DNA of 124,000 nt, from assembly GCA_951406725.2 (NCBI GenBank), contig OX597819.1, forward strand, positions 93,268,001 to 93,392,000. The letters run 5' to 3'. The DNA comes from Octopus vulgaris. Its lineage: Eukaryota. A program made the translations under genes and the position numbers. The notes below the pieces were generated by a model. It saw only the letters and a program-made list of their open reading frames with translations. It was not told where the DNA came from and ran no database searches. This document shows, in pieces, positions 16,218-59,944 of this stretch; within the stretch, counting starts at the first letter, position 1, and each line of letters starts with the position of its first letter.

Positions 16218-19200
16218 ATAAGTATGTATTTGGGTGTCTGTGTTTGTTTCTCCACCATCGCTTGACAACCAATGTTGGTGTATTTACGTCCCCGTAACTT
16301 AGCGTTTCGGCGAAAAAGACCGATAGAATAATTATTTGGCTTACAAACAATAATTCCTGGGGCCGATTCAATCGATAAAATGGGAGTGCTCCAATATAGT
16401 TGCAGTCAAATGACTGAAACGAGTAAAAGAATAAAAGAATACACACACATACACACACATATATTCGCATATACATAAGTGCATATAAACATGTTAATCA
16501 AGTATTTTTGTTAATATTTTTATTCGGATAATAATAATCATATGCATTCATAAGTAATTTGCTTGGTTCTATGTGCGAGACTAAGTATGTATGTGTCTGC
16601 AACGGATACTTTTTCTGTGCCGTGATCTTCAGCACAAAATTTTGTGTGAGCAAAGTTCAACAACTCGTTTTAGTATTCACTATTATCTGCTTTACTGATA
16701 CCACTTAATATCAGTATGAATATCATATAATCTTAACACAATTCTGCAGAAATCCATGTCCTCGTGTCATTATAAAATGAATCTATTGGATAATCCCTTT
16801 GTGGAATACCTCCCTATTCTAGATATTTTTTTAAAATATATACTAGAATAAATTGACGTGTGTTCTTTGTATTAATGTTGAATACGGTGATGGGGATCTC
16901 TCAGTGAAACCAGATTACAAATCCGTTTCAATCCTCAGAGAAGATTATTCTCGTGATTTGTAATACTTCTAGAAAGACTTTTCATCTGCTAGAAACACCA
17001 GTAATTTTTCTTTCAAATCCCATTTTGTCATCTTAAAAAAAAATGTTAGAACGCATTGTATAATAACGTTTCTAAGAGAGTCCTGTAAATAACTCGATGT
17101 TTAATGTTGGAATGTCTCAGGTCATAGATCAGTTGGACTAACGTAGACTTAGAGCTAAACAGCCACAACAGTAAGAAAGAACATCCATGTCACGTGATAG
17201 TCTAAATCAGAGGTTTCTAAGATTTCTGTAATCTTGTCCTCATTATTTCCTTCTGATGAACACACACGAAGCCCTTTATCTTTTTACCTTTTATCTTTTA
17301 CTTGCTTCAGTCATTGGGCTGCAACCATACTGGTGCACCACCTTGGAGGAGTTTAGTCGAACAAATCGACCTCAGTACTGTTTTTAATATTTTTAAGCCT
17401 AGTACCTAATCTCTCGGTCTTTTTACTGAAAAGCTTAGTTACGGGGCGAAAAATCCTAAAACATTTCTCAACTGATGACAGAGGAGAAACATAATACCAA
17501 AGATACACATATAGGTATATACATAAATGCACACACATGGATATATATGTATATATACACGCAACAGGCTTCTTTCAGTTTCCGTCGACCAAATCCAGTC
17601 ACAAGGCTTTGGTCGGCCTGAGGTTTTAATAGAAGACATTTTCGCAAGACCGCATCGCTGGAAAGCAAGCTTTTGGGGGGTTTTTTCGTCTTTTCTTAGT
17701 TGTATTAAGCTGAATTTTCGTAGCATCCGTGACTTCTGTCGATGATGCTCGGAATGGAAGTTCATAGACTACGTTTTTCTGATTATAAAAGTAATATTAT
17801 TTTTTCTCAATATATAGTCTGATTGCAGTAAATTTTAGCCACAAATTATTCTCTTACAGCGTAGAGCACAACTTGTAAATGCATTCATCGCTCTTTAATG
17901 ATTAAAAAATATATATAGCAGCTTTCATAGAATCCATTTCAATAGATCTGTTCGGTATAGTGTGATTACAATCCCAGACACCATTCTTTTCATAAGAAAA
18001 CTAATTTTTACACTATTCACTTAAACAACAAATAAATTACCTCTCTCAAACTTGACAGAACAAGTTTATCAAATTACATTGCGAGTTTGTCTCAAATGAT
18101 GTTATCCTATTGACCCAACAAAACCCACAGCTGGCTGAGTGCTGAACAACCAACATAAAATCAATGGGAACATGACTTTGTCCTAAACAAGTAAACTCAG
18201 TTGCTAATAGTTCAAAATACGCTGCGTAAAATAATATAATGGAGTGTGTACTACTACGTTGTAAGCAATGGAAAAGTTTAATCTATATTTTATGAACTTA
18301 CAGTAATGTTATAGTATTTAACCTGTGGATAAATATTAGTTTCATATCCGGCACAAAGCCAGCAGTTTCGAGAAGGAGTAAGTAGATTACATCGTTCCCA
18401 GTACTCCACTAGGACTTATTTCATGGACCCCGTAAGGCAAAGTCGACCTCGGTGAAATTTGAACTTAGAACCTAAAGATGGACGAAATGCTAACGATTCT
18501 GCCAGCTCACCGCTTTCCAGTGGAAAAATATTAAAACTAACGCTGATTAATTAGGAAAGTAATAAAGAAAGCAAGCGATACATTACTAAATCGCCTTTGC
18601 ACTGTGATCAATGAAATCTGAAACGGTGACTTGCATATTTATTCTCAATAAGTTCCGATAGATTCGAACGTAAATAGGCTTATCGCTGTTAGGTAACAGA
18701 AGAACAGCTTCTCCTTTTTCTGACGACAATGTTTTCATAGCACCACTCGGCTTAAGGGACTTTGGGACACTAGTGTTTCGACATGTAGTGTCTTGTTAGT
18801 CAGAAAATATAAACAAGAGTCATTGGCTTTATTTAATTTTTTTTTTTTGTTTTGACTCAAAGGTTTGGGTATTTCTGACTGGCGAGACATATGTCAAAAC
18901 GTTGATTTCCCAATTTCCCTTGCACTAATGAGTCGAGTGTGTTATGAAGATCTTATTGTAAAAACAATAAGCTGTTCTCATGTGACGAACACAATAGCGA
19001 TTAGCATATTTATTTCGAATCTACCAGAGCGTATTGAGAATAAAATTATGCATCTTTATTCACACTGCCATTATGCTTCTGTGCTGAAGTGTGCGATTGC
19101 AGAATGTTACTGTTGTCGTTATAATAGAATTTCTAGAATTTATTTATCTAAAGATGATTATCTCCGCAAAGTACATTTATTTCATTTTCTAGTGCTACAC

Positions 19201-20327
19201 TTCTCTGACACTGGATCTGAAGTGGAAAATTTCAAATGCATACGTCTAGTTTCTCAGTCACATGATTTACTGTCGTATATCTATATTCAAATATGCTAAC
19301 GTACAGTTACCCACTTGTCTGTGCGTCTTTCTTTTTCTTTCATGAACTTTTCCTATTTTCATTTAGTAGTGGCAAGTTGAAAAGACAGAAGTGACTTTGC
19401 TGTATTTTTTTTTTATTGTATATTAACAATTCTAAGTTTGCAGTACTTTTAGCGACCTATTTCGATATTAATCACTACTTTCTAAGTAGTCTGTTTTATT
19501 TGACTTTCATTTGCTAATATAGTAGAGACATATTTATTATCTTAATGTATGATAATATTTTATTTTGCAATTAAATTTTCTTCGCAAAACCGACCGAAAC
19601 ATCTATAGTCAATATCGTTTCTGTTTTTTTTTTTCTTTTCTTTTTAAACTATTTACCCAAGGAGCCAACATTCAAATTTAAAGTATTAAAGTTCTGTTTA
19701 CACACCAACCATCCGATGTTATATTTCTATAAAATTGGGTCTAGTTTCTGTAATAAATCAATATTGTATTGAAACGTGCTGAGTTTATCTGATAAGAAAT
19801 ACCGAAAGTCGTTACTCTAAACATGCTGTTGGGAGATTTAAAACTTCCTTCGAATTGTCTAAAACAAACAAAACATTACGTCCAAACAAAAAATCAATAG
19901 AATACACAAATTCTTTTCGAAGTAGCGTTTTTCTCATAATGATCTCTTCGTAATCAAGATCTTGATAGCAACAAACAAATTACAAAAACTGTAGTCTTTG
20001 TAACCCGCTGTGAAATAAAATTAAAATCGGTCAATATCATATCAGTAATAAACAAATCTAAACAAAAAGACATAAGCAGTTTATATTGGTCACATGATAT
20101 TTTCTATTTAAGGCAGAAACAGAAGTGTGTGTATAAAATGTCTAGTAGTATTTATTTACTTATGTCGATTTTGCTTAACTGAGATCAAATCCCAACAATT
20201 TTCAGTTGGTGAATTAAGTAAAACACTGAGATCAAATCAATCTATTAAATCGACTTTTCTCTCCGATTAAAGTGCCTTTTGCTTTGTGTCTGTGTAAGAA
20301 ATCCTCATTATTATCATTATTACTGTT

Positions 20328-21699: not shown

Positions 21700-22420
21700 G
21701 TTATAAATACCAATATTACGTGGATTATTCTGGGCGAAGTCTTAAGAAGGATCCCTCTTATTGGATTGGCATATATGACTAAGGATTCCACTATCAAAAT
21801 TCTTCATCTTTTACCAATGTTATAATCCAACATTATGAGATGATAATAATGAAATAATTTTAAGTGAGCCTAATGTGAGTTCGGATAGTCTTTCCCTGAG
21901 AGCTTTATTTGTTACCTGACAGCTAGAAGCACATTGGGAACATGATTAGTCATGGCGGTGCTCAGCAAAATCATGAAAAAGAGAGGTATTATCCATAATT
22001 TCTAGGTGAATACCTATGCTAAATGCATGGTTAAAGATTTGGAGCGATTGGCACCTTTCTCTCAGTAGTAACCTCAGCATCGCACAGAAATTTGTGATTA
22101 GCGACAAGTCTGTTCGAGACAACCTTTACTTCATATGATTGGTTTTTGAAGGAAATGGTTGTATATGGCTTCGGAAGGGTCCCGGTCAATGAAACTGGCT
22201 TCGAACAGCGATATCTATTTGGTGACCAAGGTAAACGAACATCTAAGGGGTCTGTTTTAAACCACACATTCAGTCTCACAAGAGTTTCCTTCTATTTGAT
22301 CTTGCATGTATTTTCTTTTCGGCCACTGCTGCATAGGTTAACTATGGCGAGGGACATTCCGACAATATACCGTAAGTTACTTGACTACATCCCATAAATT
22401 TCTTAGTTCAGTTTTCGAGC
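21700..22420 (-). mobile_element. Possible highly decayed non-LTR retrotransposon fragment
   Basis: Coding-like composition with weak resemblance to REL-LINE C-termini; many stops. Confidence 0.25.
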
Positions 22421-57294: not shown

Positions 57295-57337
<43 letters not shown>

Positions 57338-57365
57338 GTATATATATATATACGTATATATATAT

Positions 57366-57998
57366 GTGTCTTCAATACAACCATCTGGCTTTAACTTGGT
57401 TTAAAATTCCTTGGTTTGTTTGGGCAAGACAGTTTTTTCACCCCTTGCTGCTTGGTAGGTGTGCAAATGCACATATTTGTGTAGGTGTGTTGATATTATT
57501 GAAAAATGTAGTTCACCATGAAAATATGAGATCCATGAAATTCCTGAACTGTGAAGGCCAAAGTAAATGACTTGCTGTCAGAGACACTTGTGTTGGGTGA
57601 CTTGTTCTGCTTCAGATAGGAATGGTCCAACCAATCTGTTTTAATGTGTTGTTAGAATATCTACTGTAGTTAACATCTTGGATGTTGGGGCAGCCACTGA
57701 AGTTAACAATTGTTAGCTTGGGGCAGAATTTTAGTACAAGTTCTACTGATTTGTTAGATATCTTTTCAATATTCCGAAGGACCATCTCCTCAAGTGTGTT
57801 ATGACAACAACCTGCAACTAGGGAAGCAATCCCAGCGTCAGTGATTGAATTTCTACTGAAGTCTATACTCCTCAAGTAATGGCAATTTTCTCCCAGAGCT
57901 TGCATTGCTACGTCTGTGACTTTGGAACATTGGCTTAAATTTAAACAATGAATATTCCGGCAGGATCTAGACAAAGCTACCACAGTAGCATCATCGCA
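57366..57998 (-). pseudogene. AMN1: 5'-truncated, uninterrupted copy of AMN1 (LRR protein, antagonist of mitotic exit network 1 homolog); CDS about 57998-57612 plus ~245 nt of putative 3' UTR
   Basis: VVALSRSCRNIHCLNLSQCSKVTDVAMQALGENCHYLRSIDFS..LVAGCCHNTLEE..CPKLTIVNFSGCP..LKQIGWTIPI matches, from memory, the vertebrate AMN1 C-terminus (ALGKNCPFLQCVDFS..LKQVTWTVY). No AG acceptor upstream; fused directly to the PLE. Confidence 0.8.
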
Positions 57999-58003
57999 CG
58001 GCG

Positions 58004-59179
58004 ATGGGAACGAGGTTTGCTCCCGTTTACGCCAACTCTGTAATGGGATACTTAGAAGAACAACTCTACCAAGAGGTGGAGGTAAACTATGGCACTGGAT
58101 TTAGAAAGTATATTGAAAAGGCATGGAAGAGATACCTAGACGACTGTTTCATAATCTGGACAGAATCTCTAAATACTCTGGAAGAGTTCAATATCCTCCT
58201 GAACAACCTACACCCATCTCTCAAATTTACAAAGGAGATGAGTAGTACCAAATTACCATTCCTGGATATAATGGTAATTAAAAAAGACACCACCATCACC
58301 ACAGATATATACTATAAACACACAGACACACATCAATACCTAAATTTTAAGTCGTGCCATCCACCACATACAAAACGTAACATCCCATACTGCCTAGCCA
58401 GAAGAATTTGTACTATTGTAGAAGATGCAAATATCAGGAACAAACGCCTAATAGAACTAAGAGAATTTTTGCTCAAACAAAAATACCCATCTCTACTTAT
58501 AGAAAATGGCATACAGCGGGCTATAAAAATACCTATACAACAACTTAGGACAACCCAAGGAAGAGGAAAACAAGAACAAGTCATACCATTCATAGTGACA
58601 CACAACCCATGTCACCAGAATATCTTCAACATTGCCAAAGCAAACCTACCAATCATTGCCCAAAGTAATGAATTAAAAGACATAATCAAGGATCGAGCTA
58701 TGGTGCTTAGTAAAAGACAGCCTAAAAACTTGAAAACATTACTAACAAAGGCTAAATTTGACCTCAGCAACAAAGACCAAACATTCACGGTATCTAAATG
58801 CAATGATAGCCGATGTGGCACATGCCAATTCATACATACCGGTCAATATATAAACACAAAAACCGGGAAAATATTCACAAACGCGAATATGAACTGCAAA
58901 AGCAGAAATTTAATTTACTGCATCAAATGCCCAAATTGTGAAGAAATATATGTAGGTCAGACGGGAAACGCACTATTAGAACGCTCACGTGTACACCGGC
59001 AACAGATTAGAGACCCAGAGGTCCGTCAGATACCTTTGAGTAACCACCTAGCAACATGTGGTCGGAAAATATATATAATATTTCCATTCTACAAATTACA
59101 CAGCCCAAGTGAAATCGAGAGGAAAATCAGAGAAAAGAATTTTATTGATAAATTCGAACCCAAGCTAAATAAGCAATAA
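58004..59179 (+). CDS. PLE RT (C-terminal half) plus GIY-YIG endonuclease, 391 aa, N-terminally truncated
   Basis: MGTRFAPVYANSVMG, WKRYLDDCF, CNDSRCGTC linker, NLIYCIKCPNC..YVGQT..LERSRVH. No stops. Confidence 0.9.
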   Translation: MGTRFAPVYANSVMGYLEEQLYQEVEVNYGTGFRKYIEKAWKRYLDDCFIIWTESLNTLEEFNILLNNLHPSLKFTKEMSSTKLPFLDIMVIKKDTTITTDIYYKHTDTHQYLNFKSCHPPHTKRNIPYCLARRICTIVEDANIRNKRLIELREFLLKQKYPSLLIENGIQRAIKIPIQQLRTTQGRGKQEQVIPFIVTHNPCHQNIFNIAKANLPIIAQSNELKDIIKDRAMVLSKRQPKNLKTLLTKAKFDLSNKDQTFTVSKCNDSRCGTCQFIHTGQYINTKTGKIFTNANMNCKSRNLIYCIKCPNCEEIYVGQTGNALLERSRVHRQQIRDPEVRQIPLSNHLATCGRKIYIIFPFYKLHSPSEIERKIREKNFIDKFEPKLNKQ

Positions 59180-59665
59180 TAATAATACTTAGAGGTATTA
59201 CTTCCACTGCTACGACCATGATCACTAACAACAACAACAATACTAAAGGTGATCAAGACGAAGATAGCAGGAAAATTATCTTATTTAGGGTTAAAAGTTC
59301 TATTGCCACCACCATCACCACTAGCAACAATAATTAAGGTGCTGACAATGATGATGATGACAATTGAAATATAAAAATATAAAAATCTCTGACAAAGGAT
59401 ATTTACAACATTTCTAAAAATAACCCAACAATTGCTGCTTCGGCCAGGGTCAAGATACAGGACTCTTGACCTGTCCAACAAAGCGTGATGCCTAAACCAA
59501 TCAGCTCAACCAACCAATCAGCTTAAGTAATTGAGTGATACTACACACTGATTGGTCAGAATACAGTTTGCAAAACCTAGCACATCTGGAGCCTACCCAG
59601 CTGTATTTATATATCACTCATCTTGCTACAGTCAAAAATAAGCATGACTGTCAACACTACTACAT

Positions 59666-59708
59666 GAACCCGAAGATTGCAGAATTCAATGCATGAAAGT
59701 ACTAGTGT
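59666..59708 (+). ncRNA. Hammerhead-like motif in the 3' end of PLE 2 (degenerate)
   Basis: ac CCGAAGA ttgca-gaattcaa-tgcat GAAA gtac T A gt: palindromic stem III, U4 changed to C, weak stem I. Confidence 0.5.
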
Positions 59709-59872
59709 CAATCAGAATGAATATTTAACATTCTACTATTTCATTTTATTTTATTCAATTATAATATATTATCTTATAATATATCATTATAAGATTGTAA
59801 ATAAAACGTGAAAATCAGACAAGGTTGGAATTCTTTTTATTAATATATTCTTCTATACACAATCACACACAC

Positions 59873-59944
<72 letters not shown>

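What the first reader, a model, noticed from the sequence alone, without database searches (positions are those of the whole stretch)
57366..59875. Penelope retroelement fused head-to-head with an uninterrupted host AMN1 fragment: apparent PLE-mediated retrocopy
Seen: a stop-free AMN1 3' CDS plus ~245 nt downstream (minus strand) joins the 5'-truncated PLE (plus strand) with no spacer at about 57996. The bases gca read both as AMN1 Cys (minus) and as the start of the PLE (G)TAMGT codons. There is no splice acceptor upstream of the AMN1 part, no AMN1 5' sequence was seen elsewhere in the window, and the whole cassette lies between (TA)n tracts. Known: PLE insertions often carry an inverted partial pseudo-LTR at the 5' junction, as PLE 1 does here. 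Inference: this PLE RT used a host mRNA as template for that inverted second segment. That would be gene retrocopying by a Penelope element rather than by a LINE, which to my knowledge is rarely documented. Intact frames suggest a recent event.
Basis: partly seen in the sequence, partly recalled or inferred. Interest (0 to 1): 0.88.

Follow-up and report, generated by a model that had tools for sequence, protein, structure and literature searches.

The report
Spliced AMN1 retrocopy fused to Penelope element
A 540-base intron-less copy of the octopus AMN1 messenger RNA sits head-to-head against a truncated Penelope-like retrotransposon inside a (TA)n microsatellite, which suggests that this poorly understood class of mobile element can copy host genes as well as itself.

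Summary
Window 57456-57995 (minus strand) is a processed copy of AMN1 mRNA. It runs without interruption across three exon-exon junctions of the multi-exon parental gene, which I recovered from Octopus vulgaris (L001) and O. sinensis (L002). Only one substitution in 540 nt is private to the copy.

It abuts, bluntly at 57995|57996, a 5'-truncated Penelope-like element (PLE) with an intact reading frame on the plus strand (57996-59874). An independent copy of the same PLE family in O. sinensis ends at the same ...ACCC terminus next to a (TA)n tract.

Three details need correcting:
- AMN1 identity stops at 57456, not 57366.
- The 90 nt at 57366-57455 matches nothing I could find.
- The claimed 'gca' overlap is not AMN1-derived.

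The AMN1 piece has no poly(A) tail. It starts about 110 nt before the gene's AATAAA signal, 2 nt after a CACACC motif that resembles the PLE's own terminus.

Best explanation (confidence about 0.6): one PLE insertion into a (TA)n tract, in which cDNAs primed from both DNA strands used different templates, PLE RNA on one side and AMN1 mRNA on the other, and were then joined. This is the PLE counterpart of LINE-1 twin-priming chimeras.

Still untested: an empty allele, read support across the junctions, and which enzyme did the reverse transcription.

The parts
57299..57365 (.). Left (TA)n microsatellite, interrupted by two CG dinucleotides. Presumed half of the target microsatellite.
   Evidence: Read directly; tract list. 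Such tracts are common: 190 of 12 nt or more in 124 kb.
57366..57455 (-). Unassigned 90-nt segment between the (TA)n tract and the AMN1 copy. It is not AMN1. On the minus strand it ends ...ATGGTTGTATTGAAGACAC|(AT)n. It may be a PLE 'tail', a third template or original flank.
   Evidence: No match in the window, L001, L002 or L003. No Rfam match. Both parental 3'UTRs continue differently, as TACAAAAACTTGC.... PLE 1 has an analogous 49-nt extension beyond its inverted arm.
57456..57676 (-). AMN1 retrocopy, part from the last exon: CDS 57615-57676, stop 57612-57614, and 156 nt of 3'UTR (57456-57611). It is 3'-truncated and has no poly(A).
   Evidence: 98.7% identical, without gaps, to O. sinensis L002 30734-30956. 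97.3% identical to O. vulgaris L001 27154-27371. The parental AATAAA lies about 110 nt beyond the breakpoint.
57677..57788 (-). AMN1 retrocopy, penultimate exon (112 nt).
   Evidence: 100% identical to L001 22039-22150. In the parent this exon is bounded by tttcag| and |gtaaat.
57789..57845 (-). AMN1 retrocopy, 57-nt exon.
   Evidence: 100% identical to L001 19764-19820. In the parent it is bounded by ttttag| and |gtgagt.
57846..57995 (-). AMN1 retrocopy, 3' 150 nt of the exon at L001 18704-18919. The 5' truncation point lies 66 nt inside that exon.
   Evidence: 100% identical to L001 18770-18919. Identity ends exactly at 57995.
57995..57996 (.). Head-to-head blunt junction between the 5' end of the AMN1 cDNA and the 5' end of the PLE cDNA.
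   Evidence: Parent versus window comparison. The Gly before TAMGT is conserved in all 97 homologues that have sequence upstream of the motif.
57996..59179 (+). 5'-truncated PLE ORF, intact frame. It contains the C-terminal half of the RT from motif G-TAMGT, YLDD, a CX4CX2C linker (58799-58825) and a GIY-YIG endonuclease (about 58910-59170). About 300-360 codons and the 5' region are missing.
   Evidence: Full-length relatives are 700-750 aa, and the query aligns from about residue 300-360 of them.
59180..59874 (+). PLE 3' untranslated (pLTR-like) region ending ...CACACACCC. It holds three CCAAT boxes (59497-59555) and a TATA-like box (59604-59614). No hammerhead ribozyme was detected.
   Evidence: The terminal 210 nt align to an independent family copy in O. 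sinensis (L003 10612-10839). That copy also stops at ...ACCC, 7 nt before a (TA)n tract. Rfam scan negative. PLE 1 has a 3' region of similar length, about 760 nt, ending at (TA)n.
59875..59911 (.). Right (AT)n microsatellite, followed by (TG)n, (AG)n and (GATA)n. Presumed other half of the target.
5360..7612 (+). Comparator in the same window: PLE 1, a different family (45% aa identity). It shows the canonical architecture: 49-nt tail (5360-5408), inverted 3'-end arm (5409-5652), 5'-truncated body from ...MGT (5651) to 7612, then (TA)n.

Best explanation
One composite retrotransposition event into a (TA)n microsatellite, driven by a Neptune/Nematis-like, endonuclease-bearing Penelope-like element.

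Proposed sequence of events:
1. The PLE endonuclease cut both strands of the AT-rich target.
2. On the right side, the bottom-strand 3'-OH primed reverse transcription of PLE RNA from its canonical ...CACACACCC terminus. That cDNA stopped inside RT motif 4.
3. On the left side, the top-strand 3'-OH primed a second reverse transcription, which copied 540 nt of mature, spliced AMN1 mRNA. This may have followed an initial 90 nt on another template, perhaps the PLE 'tail'. Copying started internally in the 3'UTR, 2 nt after a CACACC motif next to a small hairpin, and ran to the middle of an upstream exon.
4. The two cDNA ends were joined bluntly by host end-joining.

The outcome is the standard PLE 'inverted 5'-truncated partner' architecture, with a host mRNA in place of the second PLE copy.

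Shown: the AMN1 piece is cDNA of a spliced mRNA; the orientation and blunt junction; the canonical PLE 3' terminus at a (TA)n tract; the youth of both parts.

Inferred: that it was a single event; that the PLE RT was the enzyme; the role of the CACACC/hairpin site; the origin of the 90 nt.
For: Retrocopy status
- The fragment is colinear with four parental exons whose introns (0.84, 2.2 and 5 kb in O. vulgaris) have canonical GT-AG ends. 319 nt are 100% identical across the junctions.
- The parental locus is elsewhere, and no AMN1 5' exons occur in the window.

Geometry
- The AMN1 antisense and the PLE sense lie on the plus strand with both RNA 3' ends facing outward and zero spacer. A single RNA template cannot give this, because the antisense of a spliced mRNA is not transcribed from the gene.
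- The same head-to-head design made of two PLE copies is seen in PLE 1 and in L006 (arms 1701-2878 and 3338-4469, 96%). It is described as typical of PLEs (PMC8557442, PMC3846280).

Bona fide PLE integration on the right side
- The 3' terminus is shared with an independent family copy that also sits at a (TA)n tract.
- The element has the CX2-5CxxC linker that has been proposed to mediate microsatellite targeting (PMC8557442).

Features unlike LINE retrocopies but like PLE initiation
- There is no poly(A), and the start is internal, about 110 nt upstream of AATAAA.
- The start is not homologous to the flank and is AC-rich, next to a hairpin.
- Purified PLE protein cleaves and extends both strands and initiates internally at a non-homologous AC-rich stem-loop (PMC11167929).

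Youth
- Only one private substitution in 540 nt.
- The PLE has 394 codons without a stop.
Against: - No target-site duplication can be read, because both flanks are (TA)n. No empty allele and no reads were available.
- The 90 nt at 57366-57455 is unexplained. If it is original flank, the left break was not in the (TA)n tract.
- The junction shows no microhomology, which fits simple end-joining of any two DNA ends equally well.
- The anole PLE needs a specific RNA element for initiation in vitro (PMC11167929), so use of a bystander mRNA should be rare.
- The CACACC resemblance is a 6-mer. It occurs twice in the last exon, so the local chance is roughly 2%.
- No hammerhead ribozyme or direct pLTR repeat is present to tie the left end to the PLE.
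- This is a single locus.
Confidence: 0.6

Rival explanations
1. Two separate events. An older, already truncated AMN1 retrocopy, made by any RT, lay near a (TA)n tract. The PLE later integrated with its 3' end in the (TA)n tract. Its 5' end was joined inside the retrocopy, and the intervening DNA, including the AMN1 5' part, was deleted.
For: PLE and LINE insertions can form 5' junctions without a TSD and with target deletions (PMC3846280, for a Pen2 copy). No TSD is visible here. The 90 nt at 57366-57455 could then simply be old flank.
Against: This needs an extra event and a deletion that ends exactly at the PLE 5' end. The AMN1 piece would still be an odd retrocopy, with no poly(A) and an internal 3' start. 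Both parts look equally young: one private substitution in 540 nt and an intact PLE frame. No AMN1 remnant lies to the right of the PLE.
Confidence: 0.15
2. Repair patch. Free cDNA fragments, one from AMN1 mRNA and one from PLE RNA, possibly made by different RTs, were captured by end-joining at a double-strand break. There was no target-primed synthesis on the AMN1 side.
For: Capture of retrotransposon sequences and of reverse-transcribed spliced mRNA fragments at breaks has been shown in mouse zygotes (PMC4516963). The AMN1 piece is an internal fragment truncated at both ends, without poly(A), joined bluntly.
Against: The PLE ends exactly at its family-specific 3' terminus against a (TA)n tract, as in an independent copy. 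That is the signature of target-primed integration rather than random fragment capture. The outward-facing 3' ends of both cDNAs are what two-sided priming predicts, whereas capture would give either orientation.
Confidence: 0.15
3. The PLE inserted into the terminal exon of the genuine AMN1 gene.
For: The annotated O. vulgaris AMN1 protein is 100% identical over 107 aa.
Against: The genuine gene lies at another locus and carries three introns inside the region that is continuous here. No upstream exons occur within 66 kb on the relevant side.
Confidence: 0.01
4. Assembly artefact joining unrelated sequences.
For: PLE inverted and tandem structures are known to disturb assemblies (PMC8557442). 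No reads were available to me.
Against: An intron-less AMN1 sequence can only come from a real retrocopy in genomic reads. The junctions are clean, and the flanks are ordinary unique sequence plus microsatellites.
Confidence: 0.03

Closest known systems
LINE-1 twin-priming chimeras (antisense mRNA/LINE-1, tRNA/LINE-1 and 5S/LINE-1 insertions; Ostertag & Kazazian 2001; PMC13174262)
   Same: Two cDNAs lie in opposite orientation with their 3' ends outward and are joined internally. One is the element and the other a cellular RNA. The mechanism is interpreted as reverse transcription primed from both ends of the endonuclease-induced break.
   Different: The element here is a PLE with a GIY-YIG endonuclease and a telomerase-related RT, not a LINE with an APE endonuclease. 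There is no poly(A)/poly(T), no TT/AAAA target and no readable TSD. For PLEs, two-strand cleavage and extension appears to be the normal mode (PMC11167929) rather than an occasional accident.
Canonical PLE insertion with an inverted 5'-truncated partner copy and 'tail' (Evgen'ev & Arkhipova 2005; Arkhipova 2006; PMC8557442; PMC3846280)
   Same: A 5'-truncated PLE body, a head-to-head inverted segment at its 5' end and an AT-rich/(TA)n target. There may also be an extra 'tail' at the outer end of the inverted arm. PLE 1 in this window is a textbook example.
   Different: The inverted segment is a spliced host mRNA rather than a second copy of the PLE 3' end. The putative tail is 90 nt, longer than the usual 30-40 nt, and could not be verified.
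PLE trans-mobilisation of host genes in Adineta vaga (NRPS and LRR genes framed by Pen3a pLTRs; PMC3846280)
   Same: A host gene sequence is moved in association with PLE sequences. Curiously, one of the rotifer cases also involves an LRR protein gene.
   Different: In the rotifer, whole intron-containing genes lie between direct pLTRs, with an 8-bp TSD and a documented empty site. Here an intron-less, doubly truncated mRNA fragment lies inverted against a truncated PLE body, with PLE sequence on one side only.
Classical processed pseudogene (L1-type retrocopy)
   Same: Intron-less and 5'-truncated, with an intron-bearing parental gene elsewhere.
   Different: No poly(A) tail. The 3' end is internal to the 3'UTR. 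No TSD is visible, and the fragment is physically fused to another retroelement.
cDNA capture at double-strand breaks (PMC4516963; yeast Ty1 cDNA capture, cited from my own knowledge)
   Same: Internal fragments of spliced mRNA cDNA and retrotransposon sequences are joined by end-joining.
   Different: Here the retroelement end is its precise canonical 3' terminus at its preferred target.

Membership tests
Penelope-like element (C-terminal EN+, Neptune/Nematis-like) | PLE-type reverse transcriptase | tested here: met
   Only the C-terminal half is present, from motif 4 (G)TAMGT through YLDD and the thumb. It is 56-64% identical to proteins that combine RVT_1, HTH_animal and GIY-YIG domains.
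Penelope-like element (C-terminal EN+, Neptune/Nematis-like) | C-terminal GIY-YIG endonuclease | tested here: met
   Pfam PF01541, E = 9.2e-06, 26.3 bits against a cut-off of 22.6, residues 306-392 of the 394-aa frame.
Penelope-like element (C-terminal EN+, Neptune/Nematis-like) | CX2-5CxxC linker upstream of GIY-YIG (Neptune/Nematis clades; PMC8557442) | tested here: met
   CNDSRCGTC at 58799-58825, read directly. No phylogeny was run, so the clade assignment is provisional.
Penelope-like element (C-terminal EN+, Neptune/Nematis-like) | Pseudo-LTRs (direct repeats from partial tandems) | tested here: not met
   No direct repeat of the 3' region occurs in or near the cassette. This is expected for a copy that lacks its 5' third, so it carries little weight.
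Penelope-like element (C-terminal EN+, Neptune/Nematis-like) | Hammerhead ribozyme motif in the pLTR | tested here: not met
   No hammerhead family appeared in a permissive Rfam scan of 59150-59860. Some PLE lineages lack a canonical hammerhead ribozyme (PMC8557442).
Penelope-like element (C-terminal EN+, Neptune/Nematis-like) | Family-specific 3' terminus inserted in an AT-rich/microsatellite target | tested here: met
   The window copy and the O. sinensis copy (L003) both end at ...ACCC, at or within 7 nt of a (TA)n tract. PLE 1 also ends at a (TA)n tract.
Processed retrocopy of AMN1 | Precise absence of parental introns | tested here: met
   Three GT-AG introns are removed exactly, and 540 nt are colinear with the spliced parent.
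Processed retrocopy of AMN1 | Intron-bearing parental gene at another locus | tested here: met
   The parental genes are on OX597837.1 (O. vulgaris) and CM016882.1 (O. sinensis), each next to a kinase gene. The window lacks the AMN1 5' exons.
Processed retrocopy of AMN1 | Poly(A) tail at the mRNA's polyadenylation site | tested here: not met
   The copy stops at ...CACACCTA, about 110 nt before the parental AATAAA, and has no A-run.
Processed retrocopy of AMN1 | Target-site duplication | tested here: inconclusive
   The flanks are (TA)n. A candidate 9-11-nt repeat (57445-57455 and about 59432-59443) was rejected, because the PLE family extends to 59874.
Twin-priming (two-sided TPRT) chimera | Two cDNA segments in opposite orientation with RNA 3' ends outward | tested here: met
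   AMN1 antisense and PLE sense lie on the plus strand. The AMN1 3'UTR is at the far left and the PLE 3' end at the far right.
Twin-priming (two-sided TPRT) chimera | Single insertion event (TSD around the whole composite; empty site) | not testable with these tools
   No octopus genome or read collection can be searched by DNA here. Exact-protein look-ups of window ORFs found no record.
PLE trans-mobilised host gene (A. vaga type) | Host gene framed by pLTRs, with introns retained | tested here: not met
   PLE sequence lies on one side only, and the introns are removed.

The most novel reading that the evidence does not exclude
In vivo, the two-sided cleave-and-extend machinery of a Penelope-like element accepted a mature host mRNA as template on one strand. 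That would make PLEs a genuine source of processed (spliced) gene retrocopies in cephalopods and other PLE-rich invertebrates. A stronger version holds that the choice of host RNA is not random: it is directed by an AC-rich hairpin/CACACC site that mimics the PLE's own reverse-transcription start. If so, PLE-made retrocopies would be recognisable genome-wide as fragments without poly(A), internally initiated, and inverted against PLE 5' ends.
Probability: 0.45. Interest if true: 0.72.

Novelty: new variant of a known kind. Interest (0 to 1): 0.6.

Why it matters
Processed retrocopies are usually credited to L1-type LINEs, and their hallmarks (poly(A), TSD, TT/AAAA target) are what retrocopy-finding pipelines look for. 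PLEs are abundant in molluscs and many other invertebrates, but their integration mechanism is only beginning to be worked out.

This is a clean, young natural chimera in which a spliced host mRNA occupies the position normally taken by the inverted second PLE copy. If it arose in one event, it would have three consequences:
- It would be in vivo support for the in vitro finding that a PLE protein primes cDNA synthesis on both strands and initiates internally without homology.
- It would show that PLEs can make intron-less host gene copies. [quoted passage not shown]
- It would imply that standard retrocopy screens, which require poly(A) tails, undercount such events in PLE-rich genomes.

The fragment itself encodes only the C-terminal 127 residues of AMN1, with no promoter or start of its own. 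It is most likely a pseudogene fragment with no functional consequence.

Tried and rejected
- Candidate target-site duplication TTGCTGCTTGG (57445-57455) / TTGCTGCTTCGG (about 59432-59443). This would have put the PLE 3' end at about 59431 and made the 90-nt segment flank (chance roughly 0.02). I rejected it because an independent family copy (L003) aligns to 59665-59874 and ends at the same ...ACCC.
- Test of whether the 90 nt (57366-57455) is an inverted copy of the PLE 3' end, part of the AMN1 locus, another repeat in the window, or a known RNA. All were negative.
- Search for the PLE ORF start inside the 3' region or the 90 nt, using the N-termini of 48 long homologues. Nothing was significant. 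The 'MVVLKT' start at the outer end of the 90 nt only vaguely resembles homologue N-termini such as MVLEKG..., so I left it as an idea.
- Hammerhead ribozyme search in the 3' region. None found. The first wide Rfam scan gave only microsatellite-driven false miRNA hits.
- Attempts to locate the window in an annotated assembly, and so reach the orthologous site, by exact look-up of window ORFs (PLE 2 ORF, AMN1 retro-ORF, PLE 1 ORF). None is on record. Other long ORFs in the window are microsatellite translations.
- A possible 5'-truncation hot spot at the AMGT motif. PLE 1 and PLE 2 break within about 8 nt of each other. I checked this on a bivalve-like locus whose predicted protein starts at MGT. 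There the DNA copy extends further upstream and the ATG is only the gene-caller's first Met. The coincidence remains unexplained but is not a general rule.
- Literature searches found no report of a PLE/spliced host mRNA chimera. Absence from this library does not prove that none exists.
Full report
WHAT IS THERE

The window is octopus DNA. On the minus strand, 57995 down to 57612 is an open frame encoding the C-terminal 127 residues of the F-box/LRR-type protein AMN1. It gives LRR_6 and LRR_4 Pfam hits and aligns to FBXL2 structures. It is 100% identical over 107 aa to the annotated O. vulgaris AMN1 homologue P0001. It is identical, through the final ...VNYSRYSNNTLKQIGWTIPI, to O. sinensis AMN1 P0008.

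On the plus strand, from 57996, a 394-codon stop-free frame encodes the C-terminal half of a Penelope-like element (PLE) polyprotein:
- RT motif 4, (G)TAMGT
- YLDD
- a CX4CX2C linker
- a GIY-YIG endonuclease (Pfam, 26.3 bits against a cut-off of 22.6)

It is 56-64% identical to bivalve PLE proteins that are 700-750 aa long when complete. About 300-360 codons and the 5' region are therefore missing.

THE DECISIVE TEST: IS IT A RETROCOPY?

I fetched the genomic loci of the annotated AMN1 genes: O. vulgaris (L001, OX597837.1) and O. sinensis (L002, CM016882.1). In both species the gene is multi-exonic.

| Window (minus strand) | Parental exon in L001 | Identity |
|---|---|---|
| 57995-57846 | 18770-18919 | 100% |
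| 57845-57789 | 19764-19820 | 100% |
| 57788-57677 | 22039-22150 | 100% |
| 57676-57456 | from about 27151 (last exon) | 97.3% |

These blocks are contiguous in the window. In the parent they are separated by introns of 0.84, 2.2 and 5 kb with canonical splice sites (gtaggt...ttttag, gtgagt...tttcag, gtaaat...cag) (O. sinensis). The fragment therefore crosses three exon-exon junctions and is cDNA of a spliced mRNA.

The 5' truncation lies 66 nt inside an exon, so no acceptor is expected there, and none is present. No AMN1 N-terminal exon occurs anywhere in the window.

CORRECTIONS TO THE OBSERVATION

1. AMN1 identity ends at 57456 in both species (...GCACACCTA|). The parents continue TACAAAAACTTGC... 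and reach an AATAAA about 110 nt further on. The copy is therefore 3'-truncated and has no poly(A).
2. The next 90 nt (57366-57455) match nothing in the window, in the fetched octopus loci searched (L001, L002, L003) or in Rfam.
3. At the other end, the parent reads AATGTT|GATGAT where the window reads CGTGC|GATGAT. The 'Cys' codon is therefore not AMN1. The bases GC at 57996-57997 fit the invariant Gly codon before TAMGT in PLE homologues. The junction 57995|57996 is blunt.

AGE AND SOURCE

A three-way alignment of the 540 nt gives the following:
- Five sites where the retrocopy matches O. vulgaris and differs from O. sinensis.
- One substitution and two 4-nt indels private to the O. vulgaris reference gene.
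- One substitution private to the retrocopy (57669, synonymous).

The copy therefore arose on the O. vulgaris side of the split, or from a shared polymorphism, and it is very young. The intact PLE frame agrees with this. Neutral divergence between the two species is 0.4-0.6% at one locus and about 2.5% in the AMN1 introns.

BOUNDARIES OF THE PLE

The PLE ORF has no close annotated relative in octopus among proteins of similar length. The exhaustive search did find an 81%-identical fragment, P0138. Its locus in O. sinensis (L003; orthologue in O. vulgaris L007) is an old, internally deleted copy of the same family. That copy aligns to window 58204-58818 (84% nt identity) and again to 59665-59874. 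Both copies stop at ...ACCC, followed at once or after 7 nt by a (TA)n tract.

This fixes the PLE at 57996-59874 with a 695-nt 3' region. That length is comparable to the roughly 760-nt 3' region of PLE 1, which also ends at a (TA)n tract. It also rejects an 11-nt candidate target-site duplication I had found at about 59432. (TA)n tracts are too frequent here to count as evidence on their own (190 in 124 kb). The shared terminus-at-(TA)n does, however, fit the published microsatellite bias of PLEs and the CX2-5CxxC linker proposed to mediate it (PMC8557442).

ARCHITECTURE IN CONTEXT

PLE 1 in the same window (45% aa identity to this PLE) shows the canonical design:
- microsatellite
- 49-nt 'tail'
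- 244-nt inverted copy of its own 3' end
- 5'-truncated body
- (TA)n

A bivalve-like contig (L006) shows two head-to-head 5'-truncated PLE copies.

The cassette studied here has the same layout with one substitution:
- (TA)n
- 90 unassigned nt
- an inverted 540-nt AMN1 cDNA where the inverted PLE arm would be
- 5'-truncated PLE body
- (AT)n

MECHANISM

The AMN1 part is antisense to the PLE part, and the antisense of a spliced mRNA cannot be transcribed from the gene. One RNA template cannot explain the structure, so two cDNAs made in opposite directions are required. Both have their RNA 3' ends outward. This is the diagnostic geometry of priming from both sides of a break, known as twin priming. 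Twin priming was recently invoked for antisense mRNA/LINE-1, tRNA/LINE-1 and 5S/LINE-1 chimeras (PMC13174262).

For PLEs this mode seems to be intrinsic. Purified anole PLE protein behaves as follows (PMC11167929):
- It cleaves and extends both strands.
- It prefers AT-rich DNA.
- It starts reverse transcription internally in the RNA, at an AC-rich stem-loop with no homology to the primer.

The AMN1 cDNA start shares these traits:
- It is internal.
- It is not homologous to the flank.
- It lies 2 nt after CACACC, and the PLE's own terminus is CACACACCC.
- It lies beside the small hairpin GUGCA..UGCAC.

I regard that resemblance as suggestive only. The hexamer occurs twice in the last exon.

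The 90 nt may be the PLE 'tail'. In that case the cDNA would have started on PLE RNA and then jumped to AMN1 mRNA. It may equally be a third template or original flank. I could not decide among these.

RIVALS

- Two-step scenario: an older AMN1 retrocopy, followed by a PLE insertion with a 5'-junction deletion. About 0.15.
- End-joining capture of free cDNAs at a break, as documented in mouse zygotes (PMC4516963). About 0.15.
- Misassembly. About 0.03.

The capture model is disfavoured because the PLE side carries the exact family terminus at its preferred target.

COMPARISON AND NOVELTY

PLE-associated movement of host genes is known from Adineta vaga. There, whole intron-containing genes are framed by pLTRs, with a TSD and an empty site (PMC3846280). 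Heterologous twin-priming chimeras are known for LINE-1. I found no report of a spliced host mRNA inverted against a PLE. I therefore rate this as a new variant of a known kind: a single, clean and young example whose causal attribution still needs an empty allele, read support and a genome-wide count.

Noticed in passing
L001 27126-27175 (O. vulgaris AMN1, last exon) versus window 57650-57680 and L002 30715-30760: The O. vulgaris reference gene differs from both the retrocopy and O. sinensis in three ways: an unrelated sequence upstream of the last-exon acceptor, an extra ATTG, and a TATT deletion. As a result its annotated protein (P0001, 241 aa) ends ...PNIQD*. It lacks the conserved 19-residue tail VNYSRYSNNTLKQIGWTIPI, which the retrocopy, O. 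sinensis and (in diverged form) Argonauta all keep. This could be a real lineage- or allele-specific lesion of the parental gene, or an assembly or annotation issue.
   Followed up: partly
window 5645-5653 and 57996-58006: Two PLEs of different families (45% aa identity) are 5'-truncated within about 8 nt of the same codon, at RT motif 4 (T-A/L-M-G-T). In each case this is exactly where an inverted segment is joined. The rough chance is about 0.6%. A bivalve-like locus did not share the breakpoint, so it is not universal. It remains unexplained.
   Followed up: partly
window 59497-59614: The PLE 3' region contains three CCAAT boxes (two forward, one inverted) followed by a TATA-like box. This looks like a promoter and fits the idea that pLTRs carry the PLE promoter. 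No hammerhead ribozyme accompanies it.
   Followed up: no
window 5360-5408: PLE 1's inverted arm extends 49 nt beyond the point where the direct 3' end stops. This matches the optional PLE 'tail' described in the literature. The tail abuts a compound (TA)n(GATA)n(GA)n microsatellite, and the same repeat types follow the cassette at 59875-60010.
   Followed up: partly
L003 9501-10845 and L007 (orthologous): An old, internally deleted copy of the same PLE family is shared at orthologous sites by O. sinensis and O. vulgaris, and is annotated in both as a hypothetical protein gene. The family therefore predates the species split, while the window copy (about 84% nt identity to it) belongs to a younger, recently active lineage. 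L003 also has a second partial 3'-end fragment at 11117-11258.
   Followed up: partly
window 57612-58070, minus strand: The AMN1 reading frame stays open upstream through at least 75 nt of antisense PLE sequence, so a chimeric ORF could in principle be translated if the region were transcribed. No ATG or promoter is evident.
   Followed up: no
window 40000-80000: A permissive Rfam scan returns about 250 'miRNA' hits (mir-297, mir-3149, mir-466 and others). All lie on TA/CA-type microsatellites and score far below the gathering thresholds. They are artefacts of low-complexity sequence.
   Followed up: yes
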